From NCBI GenBank assembly GCA_024704765.1, contig JAKMXF010000304.1:168225-232224 (forward strand): DNA of 64,000 bases, in the 5' to 3' direction. Shown here piece after piece: positions 19,331 to 64,000 of the stretch. The stretch is from Oopsacas minuta (lineage: Eukaryota > Animalia > Porifera). Made by a program: the position numbers and the translations under genes. Within the stretch, counting starts at the first letter, position 1, and each line of letters begins with the position of its first letter. A model generated the notes under the pieces. The model was not told where the DNA came from and ran no database searches. It saw only the letters and a program-made list of their open reading frames with translations.

Positions 19331-19556
19331 CGCTAAGAAATGACGTCACTCCGATCTCAAAAGTTTCACAAATGTTGCTTTTATTTATTCTTCCATATCA
19401 ATAATACATATATTCTGGTGAAAATGTTCCAGTTTCTTATTATCGACGATTATAGAGTTTCCCATCGAATATTTCCACTTCCTTTTATCTATGGTCCTTT
19501 TAAAATGAACTCAGTGATCAGACTTTATCTTTAGTAGGCTATGAGTATGTACTATC

Positions 19557-22555
19557 CACAGTGGCACGGCATGTGGAAATAGTGAAAAAAATATAACCTC
19601 AAATTGCTTTATAGTGTTGATATTTGAATTCAGCACCCCCACAAACCTCGGAAAACATTTGACATCTCTACAATAGACTTTCCATTTAGCTCCTACGTCT
19701 ATTCCAATGAGAGCATAATTGAAATTCGAAAGATTGATTTATGGTTTCAATTTTCGGTCATGATGTAATTTTGAATAATATGGATTCTCCACATCAAATA
19801 ACTGCTATTTATAGTATACCAATCGAAAGCTCTTATGTTGCTGAATAATAAATCACGTTAATCTTGGCTCCAATGAACAGATGGAATTTACTATTCTCAT
19901 TTTAAACAAGCTTGTTCGTACAAGTGCAATAAATAGAAACACGTTTCATTAAAACTCTAGTACTTTTTTTGCCTTCACTTGCGGAACTTTCCATTGCACT
20001 TTCCTAATAGCTCTTTTCGTCCTCTACAAAATACACTTTAAATTATGGTGTCAGGAAGTGTCAACGATATTTTTTTTTGCGATTTTAAATATAATCCATT
20101 CACAATTATCTAATTTTTGGCCCATATAAATCATAAATAATTATTGTGGTTGTTTATTAGCACATTTTTCATTATGAATAACGAGGATGCATACACGTTC
20201 TTAACTGCACAAAAGAATAAAACAATCACTTCTCTCGCGTCCTCGTTTATTGTCCTCAATAATTTGGAAGAAACAGAGCATGATACAGTTCGGAGAAAAT
20301 TTTCGACCCTCAGAGAAGATAGGAGAGAATACCTGAAACGAGCCGATATAACTACTTGGAATGCGATACCTTTTCATACACCACTTAAACACCCGAGATT
20401 GAGTACAGGTTATCAATGCTCAGATGAAGTCATGGTGATAGGGAGTGTTTCTTCTAGCCAATCAACCTCTGTTTTCGAAGAAGATTTTAGTAAGCCCACC
20501 CGTAAGCCTCTGAGGGAATTATCAACTAAAGGTCTTCGCAGCCGATTGTCCTCCTTACTAACACATCTTGAAAAGGTTGCTGTACAAGAGAATGTTTCCA
20601 GTAAAGAACTATCCTGTTACCTGATGATGCTATGTTCACAGACTGAATACGACTTTACTACTACCAAGTTCTGTAAAGAAATTACTGCTAAGGGAAGCTT
20701 CGGTCCAGTCTGCAATAAATTAACCTGCGATAAAGCTGCGTTCTTGATGGATTCTTTAGAAATTGGAAATAAGAAATACATCGATTTAAGACGATTATTG
20801 CTTTCAGATGTCCAGCTTCCAGGTTACAATCGATTAGCTACCCATCGGTCTCAAATTTGCTTGACTAATGACATCTTTTCAGTTGATCGAGAACATCGGG
20901 TAGGCATTGCTGTATCTTACAAAAAGCTTCTGACTCATACAGTAAACAGAATATTGACTGCTTCTGCCAATGAAATTCCCAGCGCCAGCAGTCCTAAAAG
21001 GATACGAATTTCAGATGGACTTGACGGTTCTGGCTCTCACCGGGTTTATCAGCAAGCGACTCACCCCAATATTTCAACAAAAAGTTTTATTTTATTCGGG
21101 TTTAAGGTGATTTCCATATCCGACACCGATAACAAACTGATTTGGAAAAACCCTCTACCAAATTCTCCTTTCTCAATTAGACCCGTTGCGATACTAGCTC
21201 TACAGGAGAACGAAGACAATATTCGATATCTTATAGATACACTAATCAATAAGGAGTCCACAGAGATAACGGAAAAGGGTTTAGAACTAACAAACGTATT
21301 TTGTGAAGTTGAAATTCAACGTTCACAATTGGATGGCAAAATGGCTAAGATTATTAGTGGAGCTGGCGGTGCATGTTGCCAGTTCTGCACAGCGACATTC
21401 AAACAAATCCATGATCGGGATATCGTAAAAGACGGTTTTCCAATTAATCGATCCATCACAGACCTGAAAGTATTATTTGATGAAGTTAACGAAGAGGAGT
21501 TTCTATCATTATCTTCTGACAACAGATTCAACGTTACATACAGACCAATATCTGACTTAGAAATCATACCCAGTTCGCCTTTGCATGCATATCTCCGATG
21601 TTTTGGCTGGTTTTTACATCTAATTAGCCATTTGCACGCAGGAGTATTTAAGTGGTCACCAACTTCTAAGAGAGTCTCAGATGCTAAAACTTTCGTTACA
21701 AGTTTAATTAAAGACAATCTCAATATTATTATTGACATCCCTTCAACACAGGGTGGCACAACGACTACTGGTAATGTGGTAAGACGATGCTTGATAAGAA
21801 AGGATGACAACGATCAAGATTTCCTCTACTGGGTTTTGACAGTGATCCGTCTGAGTTCAAGTCCCACATAATTGAAATTCACACATGCCTAGGAGCAATC
21901 CTACGCGTCTATAATAGCAGCAGAAGAGTGGATACAGAAGAACTAGCGCTTGTTTGCAGTAATATCTACCAGTCAATTCTCTGTGCATTTCCTTGGGCTA
22001 ATGTTTCCCCGACGTTACACAAACTGTTAGCACATGCACCGGAAATCATCTCAACGTTTAATGATGGACATGGGCTAGAGAAGTTATCTGAAGAAGGACT
22101 AGAGGCTTCTAACAAATATATTCGGAGATACAGAGATCGTCTTGCTCGCAAGTTTTCATTTGAAGAAAATTTAAAGGATGTATTTGTTCGATTGATTTCT
22201 CACAGTGATCCCATGCTGTTAATGAATCGCAAGTTTTCTATTCCAAGGCCTCCATCTACCCAAGGACTTAGATGTAGCCAAGATATTTTAGTGAACACCC
22301 TTATTCGTGATAATGAAGATCATAATGCTGATTAAAAGTAGACCTCTCAATCGATTAATAGAAAATTTGGGGAATTTTCACACCTCAGATAGGTGACAAT
22401 GACGTCATAACTTTGTCACCTGAAGGGATAGAGAAAAAATGAGTATCCCATTCGATTCGTTGGGCTCGAAAACCTATATGACAATAATACATTTTGAGGA
22501 CCTATGTGCCATCAAAATGCCTATTTCCACATTCTGACCATTTCGTGCCACTGTG
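19557..22555 (+). mobile_element. Full-length Transib/RAG1-like DNA transposon (2999 bp)
   Basis: Ends CACAGTGGCACG and CGTGCCACTGTG. 5-bp flanks CTATC / CTATT (4 of 5 match, fitting a 5-bp TSD). One long RAG1-core-like ORF inside. Confidence 0.93.
20174..22335 (+). pseudogene. RAG1-core-like (Transib) transposase, about 720 aa after correcting one 1-bp deletion near 21847
   Basis: Catalytic D (GLDGSGSH, 21023-25), D (QLDGKM, 21332-34) and E (EEGLEASNKYIRRYR, 22102-04). Zn ligands CQFC and LHKLLAH; also SPLHAYLR and TGNVVRR. Frame 2 reads ..WVLTVI and frame 1 continues PSEFKSHIIEIH.. to the stop at 22335. Confidence 0.92.
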
Positions 22556-23723
22556 CTATTTGTATGACAAATGACTTGGCCATAAAGTTTGAGATTGATA
22601 TTTGTGAATATTTCCAAAATATATCATCTATGGTCACTATTACGTCTGTAAAACATGCTAACTTTATCATCACAAATCTTTGATGTTTTGTATGAAACCA
22701 CCATGAAATCCCATCATAAATTTTGGAATCGTAGATACAATTATGCAGACTTTTAATATTGACATCATTTCTTTAAAAACTACATCTCATTGTAATTCAT
22801 CTATCTATTACTTTGCAAGGAACATACTCATTAGTGATTAGGATTATTTACAGCTGAGCGATGCTTCTCAACAAGTAGTCGTCTACATCTTAGGGTATGT
22901 TTCTTTGAAGCTATCAGAACTAACCCACTGTTCTCTCTGTTTGGGCTCCTTGAACAACAATCTTATTTACTCTGAGTATGTTGGTGACTTATATAAGGGG
23001 GTTTGACTCTACCCTGTACTTCATTAAATTACTATATATTAAGTGCATTTTATTTGTTTGATGTTCGGAGAAAGAAATTAGAAGTTCAAATAAATCCTTG
23101 GAAATCTCTAGCACAGATACTACTCTGTATAGCAACAGTTGAATGAGATTCTCGCTTTGCTTGTGTAGATCACTAGAAAAGTCTAAAGTTTAGTACCAAT
23201 CATATTTCCAACATCTGCTTTAATAACTTAAGGAAACAGGTCTGTTAAACTCGGCGTAAGGACCAAGTTACTGCTTTCAAGTAAAAAAAACAGCGTAAAT
23301 GTCAAATGTGTCGCAACAGTATGCTATATAATTAGTATAACCAGTTTATTTCTTTTCATGTATCTCTCCTCATATCTATAAATGATACTTCTACTCACAC
23401 CTATTGTTGTTCTTAGTACTATATACTATATAAATATATTACCATATAAGTATATTATTGTTAGTTTATGCCATGTTATTGTGGTTAAATTTACTGAGAA
23501 CGCATTCTCAGAAAGATTTTTAGTGTTTCCGCCGTATGTGGAAACCTATTTACAGTTGAATTTGTAATCGTAACAACAATTCTTCACGATCAAACAGAAT
23601 ATAATCAATGGCCTGAAAAATAATTTGGCAATTCTTTGCTTTGCTAGCCGTGCATATAGTAAGCCGTGGACGTGTAGAGTCTCCTGTTGAGATTCTGAAA
23701 GTTGTAAATTCACAGATGTGTTA

Positions 23724-55990: not shown

Positions 55991-57812
55991 TTTAATCTTG
56001 CTTACGCACTCTCTTATGGCAAGTTGAATGGAGGGAGCTGGTCTTATCGATTTACACTTCCTCGGAGGTTGTACGTAATAGCTATCCACGTAGTTTAATA
56101 GTTCTGTTAGCTGTAGACAATATTATGTATGTATAAATTTTGTTTTTTGTACATATTACATAACATAATTTGGCATAGGGTACCAGTTTCAGGATCTCAC
56201 GAATGGATGGTGAGATTATATGTTTTCATCTTATGTTTTGATTAATGAAGTAAGTAATAGAGCTTTCACCTGATTTGCAGACTTCTTAACTTTGATGTCA
56301 GTATATCCACCACGAAATACCAACATTGGTTAGATATTATTCATTCAATGAAACTTTGAATGTGGAAGACAATTTTAGGAAATAATCGGACAGTTCAAGA
56401 AAGCATATAAGCCAATATATGTTTCTGATTATGTACTAAATTCAATGGAGATATTTAGCCAGTTCGAAGACTAAATTTTGTGCACTATTTATCATAATCC
56501 CAGGTCTAGAATTTAGATGACCTGAACTTTGGTATTCTAGAGACAAAAGATATTTTCTTTGTATATAATACAGTTTGTAGCTTCCTACTCATATGTACAC
56601 AGATTGGAAGCCAATATTCGATTATTGCAGACTTAGTGACGTAATGTCGTGATGACTTAACACATATTTGACCAGATATCTGAAATACCTAACATATCAG
56701 TTACTTTTCTTCAGGAGATGTGAATACCAATGATTAGAAACAGTCAAATAGACAAATAGCTGGTTATAAAATTAGGACAATATAGCACAATGGCACACCC
56801 CCGGAAATTGGTCAAAATTTCAATCCGATATTTAGTAACCATTTAAAGTTCATTGGAAAGAGAAATATCTAATTACTTGATATGTCTAAAATTGTTATGA
56901 TCCATCATTTAGTTTAGGAACAACTGGGATGTATATAAGCATTACAATTTCTTGCTCAGATATTATTCTTGAAAACCACAGATATTCATTATATCAATGA
57001 ACTTAAATTCCAGTATCTAAGCAACTAATACATTCCAAAGACTTCATTCCATCGCATTTTCGACTACTCTCTTATTATAGTGATTATATAAGCGGAGTTC
57101 AAATAATAAATCCTTAAAATAGCTCAAATATTTTGATAAATTTTTCCGTTGGATATTTCTGTCGTCACTCAACTTCGAAGTCCCATAACTTCATCTGTCG
57201 CGTTCTGTCAAGTTGTCTCCTGAGTTTATGATATAGCATTTTTAATTCTCTATAAAATACAACAATTTCCAGGTTCCCAAAAATTCGCACAAATATAGTT
57301 TCAATCACATGAACTTTTGAATTTATCTAATATTTTTAAAGATTCTCTTTTCAAAATTTATATTAATATTATGGTTGCTTAGCGATGTAATTAAAACGTG
57401 AAGTTATTCACAATTTTATGCTTGTGTTTACAAAATTCAGCTTGTAATTAATATAAATACATTTTCTCATCATGTATTTTTACAAAGATACCATTAAAAA
57501 ACCAACACTCTTCTACTGTGAGAAAGATGTTCGTCAAAAGTTCCTTAATTCTTAGATTTCAGAATGTATTTTATAAGCTTATAAAACAAACATGCATATA
57601 CGTATATATAATCTTACTTTTTGCCCTGTATTTACAATATTGTTAATAAATAATATATTAATTATCTAGAAAATGGAAAATCTTCAAGCTTTTCAGCTTT
57701 ATTGTGAGCATAAATTACTTAGCACTGTTGCGTAGGATTTTGACCCGCAATACAAAATCCTAATAGCATATCCATGGTGCGGGTCAAAATCCTACGATGT
57801 AATATATGCGTA

Positions 57813-58720
57813 NNNNNNNNNNNNNNNNNNNNNNNNNNNNNNNNNNNNNNNNNNNNNNNNNNNNNNNNNNNNNNNNNNNNNNNNNNNNNNNNNNNNNNNN
57901 NNNNNNNNNNNNNNNNNNNNNNNNNNNNNNNNNNNNNNNNNNNNNNNNNNNNNNNNNNNNNNNNNNNNNNNNNNNNNNNNNNNNNNNNNNNNNNNNNNNN
58001 NNNNNNNNNNNNNNNNNNNNNNNNNNNNNNNNNNNNNNNNNNNNNNNNNNNNNNNNNNNNNNNNNNNNNNNNNNNNNNNNNNNNNNNNNNNNNNNNNNNN
58101 NNNNNNNNNNNNNNNNNNNNNNNNNNNNNNNNNNNNNNNNNNNNNNNNNNNNNNNNNNNNNNNNNNNNNNNNNNNNNNNNNNNNNNNNNNNNNNNNNNNN
58201 NNNNNNNNNNNNNNNNNNNNNNNNNNNNNNNNNNNNNNNNNNNNNNNNNNNNNNNNNNNNNNNNNNNNNNNNNNNNNNNNNNNNNNNNNNNNNNNNNNNN
58301 NNNNNNNNNNNNNNNNNNNNNNNNNNNNNNNNNNNNNNNNNNNNNNNNNNNNNNNNNNNNNNNNNNNNNNNNNNNNNNNNNNNNNNNNNNNNNNNNNNNN
58401 NNNNNNNNNNNNNNNNNNNNNNNNNNNNNNNNNNNNNNNNNNNNNNNNNNNNNNNNNNNNNNNNNNNNNNNNNNNNNNNNNNNNNNNNNNNNNNNNNNNN
58501 NNNNNNNNNNNNNNNNNNNNNNNNNNNNNNNNNNNNNNNNNNNNNNNNNNNNNNNNNNNNNNNNNNNNNNNNNNNNNNNNNNNNNNNNNNNNNNNNNNNN
58601 NNNNNNNNNNNNNNNNNNNNNNNNNNNNNNNNNNNNNNNNNNNNNNNNNNNNNNNNNNNNNNNNNNNNNNNNNNNNNNNNNNNNNNNNNNNNNNNNNNNN
58701 NNNNNNNNNNNNNNNNNNNT
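57813..58720. other. Assembly gap (908 N)
   Basis: Run of n. Confidence 1.
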
Positions 58721-59416
58721 AACAAGCTTTAAGGAATATACCACTGAAATATGTTCATCTATTGGACAAGCGTAGACTATGCATTTGTTACGGAGTCTTG
58801 GTATAATGTTGATACACATATAGAGTTGAGGTGAAAACCGCGAGCCTCTGGCACGCTGCATACTCCTGGAAAACACTAGATTTCTATAAACAAAACAAGT
58901 CAGCTGCGGTGGCCTCCTCCTTCCCCTTACAGCCACCCCCTAACGCTAAACGTCTAACGTTAACCTCACCTTGTTTATTTGTGCAGTGTTGGAGCGAGTT
59001 TGATGTGATTGCGATCACACCAAATTCGATTCTAAGCTGCAACATAAACGAATACGTACAATAAATCGTAATTTAACAGACAGGCGAGGAGCTAACGGAC
59101 CCCGAACGGCCACAGACAAGGAGACATTAAAAAATAAAAATAGATAAGAAACTCGCTTGTATCTGATTCCATGCTGTATTTCGTCTCGGCGTAGACTCGT
59201 CAGTTGCGCTGCCTTTCTCGCAATATACTTAGATGGTAGAGTGATGATATTCGCCACTGGGGATGTGCTGTTGCAGGTCGCGTTTCCATTATCTGGGCTC
59301 ACCATGATAGGGATTGCGTTGCCTGAATAACCTCGGGCAGAGGTCCCCACAAGGTTCGATGTACCTTGCCTTTGAGCGCTTTCGAATGATGGAAAAGAGT
59401 CGTGAATCGCTAAGAA

Positions 59417-62400
59417 TTAGTCAGAAGAGTGCAAGAGGTAGAATACAGTATTGAGTGATCCGATGAAAGTGTCACAGTCCCAAAGTTGGATAATTGGTTC
59501 TCTCATTCCGTCATATTTATAGAATTGCCCGTTTTGGTAAAGGATTGAATAAAAGTGTCTATTACTCAATATGCTAAAGCCAGCAAGTTGGTAGTGAAGT
59601 GTCCGTTGGTTGTGACTGATGGTAAAGTGTTTGTCAATATCGCTTGCAAAAATGTCTGGCAATTCGGGTAGATGTCCGATTTCAATTGTTAGCATGACAG
59701 GTATTGACTTGAATTGACCAGATATCCTCTCTAAGACAGCAGTAGTTGATCCACAAGACTTGCATTTAATAGGAACGAGACTTCGATTAACAGATGATTC
59801 CAGGTTTGTAATAACGCCTCCTATATTACTAATCATGGATTGTGTCTCAAAGATATTGGTGCATTGGTGGCATTGGAAGATAGTGAAATATTTGTCGTTA
59901 CACAAATCTTCTGTTCGTAAATATTTGATGATGTTACCCTCTGATCCAAAGAAATCATAAGACCGTATCAATCCTGAGGAATCATAAATAACTTCAAGCC
60001 CAATTTTAGTAGCAACATATTCTCGAAGTTTCTCAAATTCACAATTAGCAGCCAATTGGAATATGTAGTGGAATTCAGCTTCAATATGTGTACTTCCGAT
60101 TAACTTCAGTGAGTCTATGATGGTTGCTTTATTCGAACTAAGAATAGCCAATATATTGTCGATAGAACAGGTGTTAGATTGCACGATGTTGTTATACTCT
60201 CCTCCCCATTTAGGATATGGGATAAGATCTGATGCATTTTGTATAGATTGTTCTGGTATTTCAATGATCTCATGAACTTGCTCAGTTGGGAATATTAACT
60301 CAATTATTACTGGTAATAGAACAGCAATCGGATAGTCAAGATCTCTTCGTGTCTCTTCAGGTATTTCAGTAGGATAGGAGGAACGATATTCTGCGTACCA
60401 ATTACCGGCTGATACAGCAAGTTTCTCCTTAATCTCAAAATTTAGTTCGTTGGGTGGATGGTAAGAATATAGTAAATTCAATGAAGTTAGAGATGCAGCT
60501 TTTGTAGCGAGTTTCTCATGTAGTTGGGTTAAGTATGTGTTATTGACAAGAGCTGATAGTATTCGAGGTTTCAATTGAAGTAGCTCAGAATCGATATTTT
60601 CATAGATTGAGTGTTGTTGCGGTGTTTCAAATGTTTCTTCCATGGTATCCAGGTTCAATATATCATCCAAAGAATCTAAATACAAATAAATATGTGAAAT
60701 GTAGGATTGCTATTACGTATTAATCGAATCAATACAGAACACAACTAGTTTATATGTACTTAATCATGGGCTGAGTCAATTAGTTATAGTTCAGTACAAT
60801 ATTGTCTCGCTAATATATTTACCGCTAGAAGGGAATTTGCAAGATCTTTTGGGCTTCTTTGATTTGCCTGTCTTCGTTCGAACCTGCCGTTTTTCGTTCA
60901 TGCGAGAATGATATTTTCTTGATAGATGGATAGGTAATTTTGTTGTTTTGCTATCTGGGTCTTTGCGAGCAATTAGGTGGCTTGGTTTAACTTCCTCTAT
61001 CGTATATGGTCCCAAATATTTCTTTGCATCTTTTGTTCCTGGGAGTCGCTTGGCTTTCTTTATATTATGTACAAGTACCTCATCTCCTTCCACAAATTCT
61101 GATCTAAAGTTTACACTATGATTATACAAAGAAAATAATGTGCCAATTACGTACAGTTTGTAATGATGCTAATTTTATAACTAAAAGTAAGTGTTTTGGA
61201 ATTTAAGAATTCATATAATTGAGGAAACAATAAATTAGTTCCGATTCAAGACTATTTCATATTTACCTGATTATACAACAGTCAGTGAATTTAATTTAAT
61301 TTTAGTAAGAGATGATGTATGAAATTCCAACATGTTACATCACAACAAGAATGTGTTTCGTTATTGCTTACCTGTTGTGTTTAACTTTGCTGTCATATGT
61401 TTTCTTTTGAACTTTCTGACCAGCCTTGATGTTTTCAATAGCAGTCATCCTGTCAGCTTTACGTGTGGAAGAAAGATTTTCTATCCATTCGTTATCAATT
61501 ATAGGAAAGTCAAATGGGCGTGGTTCGTTTGCATCTATTTGAATATTCTCATCTTCTGATACTTCTGCCTCTGAGATATCAGCTTCGGTTAGTAATCCGG
61601 GGTTAGTTGGAGAAGTGATAAGATTGAGAAGGTTAGATGAATCAAAGTCTCTCCCAAACATGAGATAGAAGGGTGTGTAGCTTGTAGAGATTTTGGTTTG
61701 AGTATTTGCTGCTAGTACTGCTGTCTGTAATTTCTCTGTCCATTCAGTGTCCCCATCAGATTGCATCTTGTTGATTTTTCTATTTGTAAAAAGTGTTAAA
61801 TTGATTCAAAGCTATCTAATTATAAACGACGTGTATTAAACGTATGTAAGGCTTAGAATAGGTATACATTTATATTTAGCATCAATACTCACGTTTTCAA
61901 TATTTTGTTGTGTGACTCAACAAGTCCGTTACTTTGTGGGTGGTATGCTGTGGTTCTTCTGGTGTTGATATTTATCTTCTTGTGAAATTCCTGAAATTCC
62001 TATTTTGAAAGTAAATAAGAGAACAATGACAATCTACTACGCGCATGTATTTAGTCTTGTACAACAATAGTAAGAAAGATAAAACGATTAATAAGGTATA
62101 TTTTCCTCCCGAAGTTAGTAGCATCAATTCGTAAATTCTTATTTATTAGTATTTAACATAAATTAAAATCCAATTTTCCACACGGTTTCTTAAATATGGC
62201 CATCAGGACGCATAATTTCCTACCAGGGTATATATTGAAGCAATGCGTTGACAATTGACAATGCAACTTGTTACGTACGTATATCCAATATAGTAAGTTG
62301 CATTGTGTATCAGGAATAATTTACTTGGTGTATTTACAATTACTAATCTCGAGTATGTAAAAATATGAGTTACCTTGCTTGAGAATTCTGTTCCCTGATC

Positions 62401-63726
62401 ATGTTGGAGGATGTTAGGCACACCGAATGAGAGATAAATTTCCTGTAAACAATCCAATATTTCTTTAGATGTTTTAGTCTTGAGTGGTCGGGCAATTACA
62501 AATTTACTCAGGTAGCACACGATGACAAGAATGTGCTGAAATCCAAGTACAGTGCGAGACATATTACATATGAGATCAATTCCACAATGACACCATGGTT
62601 CTTCAGGAGGAGGAATAGGTTGAAGCTCTCGTTGTGGCTGAGGAGGTAGAGCAGCAGAGGTTTGACAGTCATGGCAAGTTCGGATCTAGAACGGGAAATG
62701 ATTTAATTGTCAGTTTGCAGTCCAGTCTAATGTAATTTGCTACGTCCCAGATGTCCCACTAAATTAGCATTCCGTCCCGCTTTTTCTTCACTCAGGTTGG
62801 CAAATATGTTTATGTGAAATACTCCCACTACCTATCCCAATTACTAACTACCGCAAGGATCATTAGTTGTTAGATACATGATTGGTTGGTTGTACCGCAC
62901 AAATAGATTTCCATATGATAAAATTGTATACCGGTATACTAAATATCATCAGATCGCACAAATAAAGGTGTATACAGTAGAATAATTACAAGGTGAATAA
63001 CCTCAAACTATAAAATACATCCTGTTCTCAGACTTACCAACCCCTTTTGCAAATTTCCCTGGATTATCGTTGCTAAATCCCTGGATTTCAAAATTTGTAA
63101 TCCAGGTATCCCTGGAGGGTTGGTAAGTCTGTGTTCTCAGCCACATTTTCTTGGAAAATCATATATGAAAGAAATACGTAATTTAGTAACTCACGTAGGA
63201 TCCAACATCATTGTATATACCATTCCAATCATATTTGTTTCGGATTCCATCAATGGTAGTGTTGATTCCAGGATGAGTGACATTGTGATAGAATCCGATA
63301 ATGTTGTCAATTTCTGAGACTAGTGGAATCTCCAAGTATTTCACACAGCCATTCTTCTTTCTGAAAATCTACAAGAAAATTATTCTAGTTAAACGCAGAG
63401 GTTATAGGTAGCATTGAGGGGCAGAGGAGCCCCTAGCGTTTTCGCCCTTCTCATCTCCCTATTGTACGCAAATTTAATGAGGCATCTACATATCTGCCTC
63501 CTCGCAGATATGTAGTTACCTCAAGATTTCTAATTATGTCTTGGAAATATGTATAAATCAAAAATATCATTCAGGAATATACCTTCATTAGCTTATTCTC
63601 TTGAAAGTAAATCCCCTTGCACTTTCTGACAAAATTCTTCTTTCTGTAGCGATCACTCTTGATTTCTGGTGGGATAATATTCGTCTGGAGGTATCCACGA
63701 ATTGCTTCATGCTCTGTCGCATCCAT
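59417..63726 (-). CDS. Spliced Ginger transposase, 894 aa: HHCC zinc finger, DD35E integrase, GPY/F, unknown region, USP-like cysteine peptidase
   Basis: Exons 63726-63583, 63368-63195, 62685-62374, 61999-61893, 61779-61372, 61103-60823 and 60675-59417 sum to 2685 nt (894 codons plus TAA). All six introns are GT-AG and phases match (0,0,0,2,2,1). Motifs: YHNVTH..CHDC, GIDL (D 62575-77), HDQGTEF (D 62398-400), NGLVESHN (E 61916-18), TPFYLMFGR, YLGPYTI. Confidence 0.92.
59420..60230 (-). other. USP/peptidase C19-like domain within the last Ginger exon
   Basis: SNTCSIDNIL (Cys 60167-69), CHQC...CKSC zinc ribbon, IPVMLTIEI, YQLAGF, RHFYSIL (His 59555-57), FYKYDG (Asp 59510-12) and terminal TVFYLL, in the order of USP Cys and His boxes. 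Confidence 0.75.
63029..63131. mobile_element. 103-bp MITE in intron 2 of the Ginger transposase
   Basis: TIRs CAGACTTACCAACCC and GGGTTGGTAAGTCTG, with 6-bp direct repeat TGTTCT at 63023-28 and 63132-37. Confidence 0.85.
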
Positions 63727-64000
63727 AATGAAAAATGCCAAAAGTAAATATAAGTGTTTGATGTTGAAATCTAGAAACAAAGTAAAATGTTAGTGTGTGC
63801 ATTTAGGAAGTCACACATGTATAAATACGAATACTATATGACTAGGGATGAAATGTTGATATTACTTGATTTGCAATTGCTACTTGCGGGTCAAAATCCT
63901 ACGCGGGTCAAAATCCTACGCAACAGCACTCGTTCAATCGCAGACCAATTTATTTCAACTCATGGTTTTGATCGAGATGAGCAAAATTTCTTTGTCTGAA

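What the first reader, a model, noticed from the sequence alone, without database searches (positions are those of the whole stretch)
59417..63726. Intact Ginger transposase fused to a USP-fold deubiquitinase-like domain with a complete Cys-His-Asp triad
Seen: seven exons splice into an 894-aa ORF whose last ~270 aa carry NTCSIDN, two CxxC pairs, PVMLTIE, YQLAG, RHFYS, YKYDG and VFY in the order of USP (peptidase C19) boxes. Known: Ginger1 transposases were described with C-terminal OTU, Ulp1/C48 or PHD domains; I do not recall a USP-fold version. Inference: this element encodes its own ubiquitin or Ubl protease on the integrase. It might stabilise the transposase, strip H2A/H2B ubiquitin or SUMO-like marks at target or donor chromatin, or counter host silencing. 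It may define an undescribed Ginger subfamily.
Basis: partly seen in the sequence, partly recalled or inferred. Interest (0 to 1): 0.9.

Follow-up and report, generated by a model that had tools for sequence, protein, structure and literature searches.

The report
Sponge Ginger transposon with USP-fold protease
A young, expressed cut-and-paste "Ginger" transposon of a glass sponge encodes an integrase-type transposase whose tail is a ubiquitin-specific-protease (USP) fold, where described Ginger elements carry an OTU or Ulp1 protease; this is a new variant of a known design, not a new kind of system.

Summary
On the minus strand, seven GT-AG exons (63726..59417) give an intact 894-aa protein, and spliced contigs of an RNA-like public run support every intron. 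The N-terminal ~470 aa are a Gypsy-type integrase (H2C2, DD35E, GPY). The last ~270 aa have no Pfam or PDB sequence match. A confident AlphaFold model (pLDDT 88.9) matches only USP deubiquitinases in the PDB (Foldseek E~1e-8; Z 13.4-15.7 in the 50 entries listed, 402 chains at Z>=8). Cys645, His849 and Asp864 sit on the expected helix start and successive strands, and 80-86% of relatives keep them. Their 3-D distances could not be measured.

The gene lies in a real transposon: perfect 23-nt TIRs starting TGTTG, a 4-bp GCAC duplication, and an empty-site contig in a DNA-like run. The host is probably Oopsacas minuta, which holds many copies and a second family at 27% identity with the same fusion. 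The nearest integrase outside the family has an OTU-like tail, so the protease module was exchanged.

No paper found describes a Ginger-USP fusion; Repbase could not be checked. Activity and role are inferred. First-stage notes report the same fusion at 14 other places in this genome.

The parts
57722..57725 (.). Left copy of the 4-bp target-site duplication, GCAC
   Evidence: GCAC lies directly outside both TIRs. The empty-site contig in run X4 carries a single GCAC.
57726..57748 (+). Left terminal inverted repeat, 23 nt, beginning 5'-TGTTG (TGTNR pattern)
   Evidence: 100% complementary to 63903-63925. In the window the motif occurs only at the element's ends.
57778..57796 (.). Subterminal copy of the 19-nt motif TGCGGGTCAAAATCCTACG; a possible transposase-binding site (inferred)
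   Evidence: family D3 and pair I7. The motif is repeated twice at each end.
57815..58719 (.). Assembly gap (run of N) inside the element, so the true element length is uncertain
59417..60675 (-). Exon 7 (residues 476-894 plus stop): helical region followed by the USP-fold domain
   Evidence: The 60675/60823 joint is present in run X1. AF2 model.
59420..60232 (-). USP-fold cysteine-peptidase-like domain (about residues 624-894) with a four-Cys zinc-ribbon 'fingers' insert (C744, C747, C780, C783)
   Evidence: Foldseek and VIA-align matches to USPs cover model residues 148-416. Conservation of the Cys pairs.
60167..60169 (-). Codon of the putative catalytic Cys645 (in NTCSIDN)
   Evidence: First residue of helix 169-180 in the model. 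Cys in 63 of 73 family sequences.
59555..59557 (-). Codon of the putative catalytic His849 (in RHFYS)
   Evidence: First residue of strand 373-380. His in 38 of 45 family sequences.
59510..59512 (-). Codon of the putative third triad residue, Asp864 (in YKYDG)
   Evidence: Directly follows the next strand, 383-387. Asp in 32 of 40 family sequences.
60293..60622 (-). Four-helix region between integrase and USP fold (about residues 494-603); function unknown
   Evidence: DSSP of the model: helices 18-43, 50-61, 79-99 and 105-127, with high pLDDT. No Pfam hit.
60823..61103 (-). Exon 6: integrase C-terminal SH3-like part with the GPY motif (G413-P414-Y415) and a basic tail
   Evidence: The 61103/61372 joint has depth 3677 in X1. 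An alternative acceptor lies at 61115.
61372..61779 (-). Exon 5: end of the integrase core and an acidic linker
   Evidence: joint 61779/61893.
61893..61999 (-). Exon 4: carries catalytic Glu238 (LVESH)
   Evidence: Pfam rve_3.
62374..62685 (-). Exon 3: end of the H2C2 finger (C110, C113) and integrase core with Asp143 and Asp202 (DD35E)
   Evidence: Pfam rve, E 1.8e-6; joint 62685/63195.
63195..63368 (-). Exon 2: H2C2 zinc-binding domain (H76, H80)
   Evidence: Pfam Integrase_H2C2, 27.6 bits, above the cutoff.
63583..63726 (-). Exon 1: start codon and a YPYY-like N-terminal motif (Y12, P19/20, Y40, F41)
   Evidence: X1 loose ends at 63370 and 63583 read into each other's exon.
63885..63920 (.). 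Two tandem, overlapping copies of the 19-nt subterminal motif
   Evidence: family D3.
63903..63925 (-). Right terminal inverted repeat
63926..63929 (.). Right copy of the GCAC target-site duplication
   Evidence: The empty-site contig is the X4 loose end at 63925.

Best explanation
SHOWN: this is an autonomous Ginger1-type cut-and-paste DNA transposon, most likely of the glass sponge Oopsacas minuta. It spans 57726-63925, about 6.2 kb including an assembly gap. Its single seven-exon gene encodes an 894-aa transposase with three parts: a Gypsy-like integrase (YPYY-like motif, H2C2 finger, D143/D202/E238 with DD35E spacing, GPY motif), a helical linker, and a C-terminal domain with the fold of ubiquitin-specific proteases, including a zinc-ribbon fingers insert. 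The family is spliced and expressed. This copy looks recently inserted. The USP-like tail stands where published Ginger1 transposases carry an OTU or Ulp1 protease. INFERRED: the tail is an active Cys-His-Asp isopeptidase for ubiquitin or a ubiquitin-like modifier. It would be delivered in cis by the integrase to donor or target chromatin, or act on the transposase itself. There it would remove ubiquitin-type marks that lead to degradation of the transposase or that steer repair and silencing at the transposition site. This would be the same job presumed for the OTU and Ulp1 modules. The substrate is unknown.
For: Gene structure and intact ORF. Splicing of all six introns in the RNA-like run X1 only. 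An NCBI model, P0150 (LOD99_1838), has the same exon 5-6 and 6-7 junctions. Integrase domains. Element ends: perfect 23-nt TIRs beginning TGTTG and a GCAC TSD. In X4 a contig (59 loose letters, 30 shown) joins the left flank directly to the right flank with a single GCAC, which is an empty site. USP fold: AF2 pLDDT 88.9 and pTM 0.74. The top 50 Foldseek PDB hits are all USPs at E 2e-8 to 1e-6. VIA-align gives Z 13.4-15.7 for the 50 entries listed, over model residues about 148-416, with 402 chains at Z>=8. AFDB and ESM Atlas also return USP-type folds. Triad: C645 is at the first residue of the core helix, H849 at the first residue of a strand, and D864 after the next strand. This is the arrangement stated for papain-like peptidases in PMC10318531. 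Conservation is 86%, 84% and 80% in an alignment that includes decayed copies. The fusion is old and kept: L001 has the same architecture at 48-77% identity in the integrase and 53% in the tail. L002, on contig JAKMXF010000299.1 of assembly GCA_024704765.1, whose proteins NCBI names O. minuta, has it at 27% and 28%, with its own TIRs of about 190 bp. So the tail diverges about as slowly as the integrase. Module exchange: P0188 has an integrase 46% identical to ours but an OTU-like tail. It forms a clade with the window and L001 integrases at 100/99 support. Bao et al. 2010 describe Ginger1 with OTU or Ulp1 tails, 4-bp TSDs, TGTNR termini and introns.
Against: No sequence method links the tail to USPs. 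Pfam UCH, UCH_1 and Peptidase_C98 do not hit the window protein or eight relatives even at E<=1. Family profiles find no USP in the PDB. The assignment therefore rests on a predicted structure plus motif order. Triad distances in the model could not be measured because no coordinates are given. Activity, substrate and any effect on transposition are untested. The residue five positions before the Cys is Val, not the usual USP oxyanion Asn. Gln165 of the exon-7 peptide (Gln641 in the full protein) or Asn643 might serve instead (inference). The TIR is 23 nt, against 40-270 described for Ginger1. The one TSD seen is GCAC, not CCGG or CCGT. No Repbase Ginger1 reference sequence was available for a tree. 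Runs X1-X4 are of guessed kind and come from one sample. Spliced contigs may derive from other copies. The empty site rests on one contig.
Confidence: 0.75

Rival explanations
1. The tail has the USP fold but is a non-catalytic ubiquitin- or Ubl-binding module (a pseudo-protease). It would tether the transposase to ubiquitinated or SUMOylated chromatin or repair factors.
For: The sequence is so far from USPs that no Pfam or PDB profile detects it. The usual oxyanion Asn at position -5 is absent. Inactive USP-fold proteins are known (established knowledge). The nearest structural neighbour, C14orf28/DRIP1, has no shown activity.
Against: Cys, His and Asp are among the best-conserved columns, at 80-86% even with decayed copies, across lineages down to about 27% identity. 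A pure binding module would not need them.
Confidence: 0.13
2. The tail is a cis-acting processing protease. It would cut the 894-aa product, for example in the linker, to release the integrase from its tail, as viral papain-like and USP-like proteases process polyproteins.
For: Coronavirus PLpro is USP-like with fingers and both processes polyproteins and deubiquitinates (PMC10318531). A long acidic and basic linker plus a helical region separates the two modules.
Against: No ubiquitin-like LRGG-type site was looked for or noticed. The parallel OTU and Ulp1 tails in other Ginger1 elements point to Ub/Ubl deconjugation as the common function.
Confidence: 0.07
3. It is not a mobile element's gene but a domesticated host gene, or the fusion is an annotation or assembly artefact that joins two genes.
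For: Six introns are unusual for a transposon (Ginger1 was described with 0-4). An N gap lies inside the element.
Against: The element has perfect TIRs, a TSD and an empty-site contig. There are many copies at 83-98% identity in the same genome. Exon 6-7 joints appear in the RNA-like run and in none of the three runs with flat depth over the introns. The same architecture is present in L001 and L002.
Confidence: 0.03

Closest known systems
Ginger1 DNA transposons (Bao, Kapitonov & Jurka 2010, PMC2836005)
   Same: One transposase with a Gypsy-like integrase (YPYY-like motif, H2C2, DDE, GPY/F). Termini follow TGTNR, the TSD is 4 bp, and introns are GT-AG. A C-terminal papain-superfamily Ub/Ubl-protease module is present. 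A sister integrase in the same genome carries the canonical OTU-like tail.
   Different: The tail is a USP (C19-like) fold, not OTU (C85) or Ulp1 (C48). The gene has six introns (0-4 described) and the protein is 894 aa (500-800 described). The TIR is only 23 nt (40-270 described). The one TSD seen is GCAC, not CCGG or CCGT. The host is a sponge; the 2010 paper listed hydra, Aplysia, amphioxus and aphid.
USP / peptidase C19 deubiquitinases (e.g. USP30, USP35, USP46/12, USPL1, CYLD, USP18)
   Same: Same predicted fold over about 230 aligned residues, at Z 14-15.7. It has a fingers insert with two CxxC pairs. Cys is at the helix N-terminus, and His and Asp are on successive strands 15 residues apart. 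The motif order NTC ... YxLxG ... HF/Y ... YD ... FY follows the USP Cys and His boxes.
   Different: Identity in structural alignments is 9-16%. No Pfam UCH, UCH_1 or C98 hit was found. The loop between YxLxG and the catalytic His is shortened. No Asn sits at -5 from the Cys. Activity is unknown.
Vertebrate C14orf28 / DRIP1 (Q4W4Y0), an uncharacterised USP-like protein
   Same: It is the best structural match in AFDB Swiss-Prot (E 2.4e-12, TM 0.61 by hit, rmsd 5.2 over 307 columns) and in the ESM Atlas (TM 0.64, rmsd 3.9 over 260 residues). Ozhelvaci & Steczkiewicz 2023 classified it as a papain-like deubiquitinase domain.
   Different: It is a stand-alone 310-aa host protein without an integrase. 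Identity is 18%. Sequence homology was not tested here.
Other transposases with Ub/Ubl-protease tails: Ulp1 on MULEs, OTU on Helitrons, the Trichomonas transposase_11 + peptidase C19 protein, and the C-terminus of the Drosophila NOF-FB 120.7-kDa protein
   Same: The design principle is the same: a DDE or other transposase carrying a deubiquitinase-type or SUMO-protease-type domain. The predicted C-terminus of NOF (P16320, residues 731-1056) and that of a SWIM-domain protein match this model.
   Different: These belong to other transposase superfamilies. For NOF and the SWIM protein the USP-like tail is only a predicted-structure match here. I did not find it described in papers.

Membership tests
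Ginger1 DNA transposon | Transposase homologous to Gypsy integrase, with an H2C2 zinc finger and a DDE core | tested here: met
   Pfam Integrase_H2C2 (27.6 bits, cutoff 25.5) and rve/rve_3 on exons 2-4. The residues are H76, H80, C110, C113, D143, D202 and E238, with 35 residues between the second Asp and the Glu. The nearest outside relatives are Gypsy integrases at 25-33% identity.
Ginger1 DNA transposon | GPY/F motif; it distinguishes Ginger1 from Ginger2 | tested here: met
   KKYLGPYTIEEV, with G413-P414-Y415. The definition comes from PMC2836005.
Ginger1 DNA transposon | YPYY motif (Y/F-P-Y/F-Y/F) of about 40 aa just upstream of the zinc finger | tested here: inconclusive
   Y12, P19/P20, Y40 and F41 fit the pattern by eye. 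No reference alignment was available to place the columns.
Ginger1 DNA transposon | Terminal inverted repeats with TGTNR termini and no RT/RNase H | tested here: met
   The 23-nt perfect TIRs begin TGTTG. This is shorter than the 40-270 bp described. tblastn and the ORF list show only the one gene between the TIRs, apart from the N gap.
Ginger1 DNA transposon | 4-bp target-site duplication, CCGG or CCGT in Hydra | tested here: met
   A 4-bp duplication is present on both sides, and the empty-site contig has one copy. The sequence is GCAC, not CCGG or CCGT. One insertion gives no target preference.
Ginger1 DNA transposon | Integrase falls in the Ginger1 clade on a tree with reference Ginger1 sequences | not testable with these tools
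The indirect result is a 100/99-supported clade with an O. minuta integrase that carries an OTU-like tail, apart from RT-linked Gypsy integrases.
USP / peptidase C19 fold | Papain-like core with a fingers insert, matching solved USP structures | tested here: met
   AF2 pLDDT 88.9. The Foldseek top 50 are all USPs. VIA-align gives Z up to 15.7, with 402 chains at Z>=8. This rests on a predicted model only.
USP / peptidase C19 fold | Catalytic Cys at the N-terminus of the core helix, with His and Asp/Asn on the next two core strands | tested here: met
   C169, H373 and D388 of the exon-7 peptide lie at helix 169-180, strand 373-380 and after strand 383-387. The rule is stated in PMC10318531. Conservation is 86%, 84% and 80%.
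USP / peptidase C19 fold | Triad side chains within bonding distance in one cleft | not testable with these tools
   The tool returns no model coordinates.
USP / peptidase C19 family (Pfam UCH PF00443 / UCH_1 / Peptidase_C98) | Significant sequence match to the family profile | tested here: not met
   There is no hit at E<=1 for the window protein or for eight relatives. Family profiles find no USP in the PDB. I therefore file it as USP-fold or USP-like, not as a member of Pfam UCH.
USP / peptidase C19 family | Isopeptidase activity on ubiquitin or a Ubl | not testable with these tools
   This needs biochemistry.

The most novel reading that the evidence does not exclude
The USP-like tail belongs to a widespread, so far unnamed clade of transposon-borne USP-fold domains. 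The same predicted fold appears at the C-termini of SWIM/MULE-like proteins, of Drosophila NOF-FB and of large uncharacterised cnidarian and aphid proteins. On this reading the vertebrate orphan gene C14orf28/DRIP1, the closest structural neighbour in two libraries, is a domesticated descendant, as GIN1 is of a Ginger1 integrase. The same Ginger1 integrase lineage would then have recruited three different Ub/Ubl-protease folds (OTU, Ulp1, USP). That would mean deubiquitination or deSUMOylation is mechanistically required for integrase-type cut-and-paste transposition.
Probability: 0.18. Interest if true: 0.75.

Novelty: new variant of a known kind. Interest (0 to 1): 0.55.

Why it matters
Ginger1 elements were known to carry either an OTU or a Ulp1 protease, and nobody has shown what these do. 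A third, structurally unrelated class of ubiquitin-type protease now appears on the same integrase backbone. A sister lineage in the same genome carries an OTU-like tail. This is natural domain-swap evidence that what is selected is the activity (removing ubiquitin-like marks), not a particular domain. The sponge element is intact, spliced, expressed and apparently polymorphic. It is therefore a usable starting point for testing why integrase-type transposases need such an enzyme: transposase stability, chromatin or repair signalling, or escape from silencing. It also gives a lead on the origin of the uncharacterised human protein C14orf28/DRIP1. It remains a variant of a described architecture, not a new kind of system.

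Tried and rejected
- Pfam scans of every exon, and of eight relatives of the tail, gave no UCH/USP hit.
- Profile searches of the PDB sequences with 23- and 147-sequence family alignments gave only chance hits.
- Residue-level equivalence with USP catalytic residues could not be obtained. No USP sequences were available as references for hhalign, and no model coordinates are given.
- Word-indexed homologue searches of the tail found only O. minuta proteins and unnamed ENA/Logan fragments. Cluster look-ups gave no names. The taxonomic range outside O. minuta is therefore unknown.
- An Atlas search that excluded UCH families gave nothing useful, only a weak MULE cluster at 0.67.
- The TSD of the second family (L002) could not be read cleanly: GCGT against GCCG as a 4-mer, or GGCGT against GCCGT as a 5-mer. 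I left it unresolved.
- dN/dS was considered and dropped. Within-family copies diverge neutrally after insertion, and between-family pairs (53% or 27% aa identity) are saturated at silent sites.
- The host-gene and artefact readings were rejected on TIRs, TSD, empty site, copy number and RNA joints.
- Literature searches for Ginger or other transposases with USP/C19 domains found only the Trichomonas remark in Bao 2010.
Full report
**Observation**

The minus strand of 59417-63726 carries seven open segments joined by canonical GT-AG introns. With the exon-6 acceptor at 61103 the product is 894 aa with no internal stop. A second in-frame acceptor 12 nt upstream, at 61115, would give 898 aa. Pfam places Integrase_H2C2 on exon 2 and rve/rve_3 on exons 3-4. 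Together these give H76, H80, C110, C113 and D143, D202, E238 with DD35E spacing, and there is a GPY motif at 413-415. Exon 7 (418 aa) has no Pfam match.

**Transcription and splicing**

Four public runs of one sample hold the stretch. In run X1 depth collapses over the introns, for example 290-550 against 10,000-40,000 in exons. X1 also has joints at 60675/60823, 61103/61372, 61779/61893, about 61996/62373 and 62685/63195. All have minus-strand GT..AG ends except the fourth, which was laid imprecisely with three extra letters. Loose ends at 63370 and 63583 read into each other's exon. The other three runs are flat over the introns and lack these joints, so the joints reflect RNA splicing and not processed DNA copies.

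The NCBI protein P0150 (LOD99_1838, Oopsacas minuta, 98% identical over 60% of the exon-7 query) has the same exon 5-6 and 6-7 junctions. Two caveats apply: the kind of each run is guessed, and the contigs may come from other copies of the family.

**It is a transposon, and a young one**

- Perfect 23-nt inverted repeats lie at 57726-57748 and 63903-63925 and begin 5'-TGTTG.
- They are flanked on both sides by GCAC.
- A 19-nt subterminal motif occurs twice at each end and nowhere else in the window.
- In run X4 one contig joins the left flank (30 of its 59 loose letters are shown, with one mismatch to 57691-57720) directly to position 63925 onward. That gives one GCAC and then the right flank, which is a precise empty site.
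- An N gap (57815-58719) lies inside the element, so its length of about 6.2 kb is approximate.

The organism is inferred from NCBI names. Five O. minuta proteins match exon 7 at 83-98% identity, and a sixth (LOD99_1948) matches only its first 13%. First-stage notes report the same fusion at 14 other places in this genome. These notes are unchecked leads, but they fit the protein hits.

**The tail is a USP fold**

An exhaustive HMMER search found 146 relatives, nearly all of them exon-sized fragments. With these as the alignment, AlphaFold2 gave pLDDT 88.9 and pTM 0.74. The structure searches gave:

| Library | Result |
|---|---|
| Foldseek vs PDB | Top 50 hits are all USPs (USP46, 12, 18, 1, 35, 36, 30, 21, 2, 14, Ubp8, USPL1), probability 1.00, E 2e-8 to 1e-6 |
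| VIA-align vs PDB | Z 13.4-15.7 for the 50 entries listed, about 210-240 aligned residues, model residues about 148-416; 402 chains at Z>=8 |
| AFDB Swiss-Prot | Best match C14orf28/DRIP1, TM 0.61 by hit, 18% identity |
| ESM Atlas | Best match the C14orf28 cluster, TM 0.64, rmsd 3.9 A over 260 residues |
| Language-model features | USP/UCH clusters |

C14orf28/DRIP1 was recently classified as a papain-like deubiquitinase domain (PMC10318531). USPs of cells and of giant viruses follow it in both libraries.

**Triad**

[quoted passage not shown] The His and a polar residue sit on the next two core strands (PMC10318531). The model follows this rule:

| Residue | Position in exon-7 peptide | Place in the model | Conservation |
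|---|---|---|---|
| C645 | 169 | First residue of helix 169-180 | Cys in 63/73 |
| H849 | 373 | First residue of strand 373-380 | His in 38/45 |
| D864 | 388 | Follows strand 383-387 | Asp in 32/40 |

The four fingers cysteines are kept in 48-60 of 64-69 sequences, although the alignment includes decayed copies. I could not measure distances because coordinates are not returned. No sequence profile links the family to USPs. I therefore call it USP-fold or USP-like, not a member of Pfam UCH.

**The fusion is old and conserved, and the protease module was exchanged**

Locus L001, from an ENA assembly, has the integrase exons followed by the tail. Identity is 48-77% in the integrase and 53% in the tail.

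Locus L002 lies on contig JAKMXF010000299.1 of assembly GCA_024704765.1, whose LOD99 proteins NCBI names O. minuta. It holds a compact second family. A 459-aa integrase ORF is followed 84 nt later by a 388-aa tail ORF, between TIRs of about 190 bp that start TGTTTT. Identity to the window protein is 27% in the integrase and 28% in the tail. So the tail diverges about as slowly as the integrase.

The closest integrase outside the family is O. minuta P0188, at 46% identity. It ends in an OTU-like domain: a weak Pfam OTU hit, 77 of 100 Atlas feature hits to OTU clusters, and otubain/OTU structure neighbours. On a maximum-likelihood tree of the integrase core, the window, L001 and P0188 form a clade with 100/99 support, apart from RT-linked Gypsy integrases. 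L002 sits on a long, unresolved branch. At least one exchange between USP-like and OTU tails therefore happened within this lineage. The direction is unknown.

**Comparison with what is known**

Bao, Kapitonov and Jurka (2010, PMC2836005) define Ginger1 by these features:

- a Gypsy-like integrase with YPYY, H2C2, DDE and GPY/F motifs;
- TGTNR termini;
- TIRs of 40-270 bp;
- 4-bp CCGG or CCGT TSDs;
- 0-4 introns;
- an OTU or Ulp1 (sometimes also PHD) tail.

They mention a peptidase C19 domain only on an unrelated Trichomonas transposase. The element here meets the integrase, terminus and 4-bp TSD criteria. It differs in:

- tail fold;
- intron number (six);
- TIR length (23 nt);
- the sequence of the one TSD seen (GCAC);
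- host phylum.

No paper in the searchable library describes a Ginger-USP fusion. Repbase and Dfam could not be consulted. The same predicted fold also appears at the C-termini of the Drosophila NOF-FB protein and of a SWIM-domain protein. This suggests that USP-like tails on transposases are more common than reported.

**Mechanism**

The architecture, expression, mobility signature, fold and residue conservation are shown. The rest is inferred. The tail is probably an active Cys-His-Asp isopeptidase for ubiquitin or a Ubl, brought to the transposition site by the integrase. There it would protect the transposase from ubiquitin-dependent turnover, or edit ubiquitin or SUMO marks that control repair or silencing. 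This is the role presumed for the OTU and Ulp1 tails. I put about 0.9 on the identity (Ginger1-type element with a USP-fold tail) and about 0.55-0.6 on catalytic activity. The overall figure is 0.75. The rivals are a non-catalytic Ub/Ubl-binding module (0.13), a self-processing protease (0.07), and a host gene or artefact (0.03).

**Verdict**

It is a new variant of a known kind. Its interest is moderate to good because it is a natural protease-module swap in an apparently active element, and because of the structural link to C14orf28/DRIP1.

Noticed in passing
window 59143-59386: A short stretch just downstream of the stop codon behaves as a separate high-copy repeat. Contig depth peaks there (88,490 in X4). 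Many contigs break off into unrelated sequence at 59250 and 59386. It may be a small element nested in the 3' part of the Ginger. It has no second copy in this window.
   Followed up: partly
window 61103 / 61115: Two in-frame acceptors lie 12 nt apart for exon 6. RNA-like contigs and the NCBI models use 61103. A minor joint at 61815/61893 also suggests an alternative exon-5 start.
   Followed up: partly
window 63029-63131 and 63478-63523: There is a perfect 15-nt inverted repeat with a 73-nt spacer inside intron 2, and a 20-nt near-palindrome inside intron 1 (pairs I25 and I12). They could be hairpins or tiny MITE-like inserts. Their nature is unknown.
   Followed up: no
L002:6200-9650 (assembly GCA_024704765.1, contig JAKMXF010000299.1): This is a second, compact Ginger family with the same integrase + USP-like design at about 27% identity and TIRs of about 190 bp. 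The integrase and tail ORFs are in different frames, 84 nt apart, so there is a short intron or a frameshift. The TSD could not be read cleanly.
   Followed up: partly
protein P0188 (LOD99_3154, O. minuta): This is a Ginger1-type integrase, 46% identical to the window's, with an OTU-like tail. It is the canonical architecture, in the same genome.
   Followed up: partly
protein P0189 (O. minuta, annotated 'PEP-CTERM domain protein'): This annotated protein joins NHL repeats and a beta-propeller to an 89%-identical copy of this integrase. It is probably a chimeric gene model caused by a Ginger insertion next to or within a host gene.
   Followed up: no
AFDB P16320 (Drosophila NOF-FB 120.7-kDa protein, residues 731-1056) and A0A814FZU2 (SWIM-type protein, residues 592-861): The predicted C-termini of these transposon-type proteins match the USP-like model (E 7e-8 and 2e-12). 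USP-fold tails may therefore be common on MULE-like transposases. I found no paper saying so.
   Followed up: no
window 19552-22560: Other first-stage notes place a RAG1-like transposon in this window, and another just beyond its end. I did not examine them.
   Followed up: no
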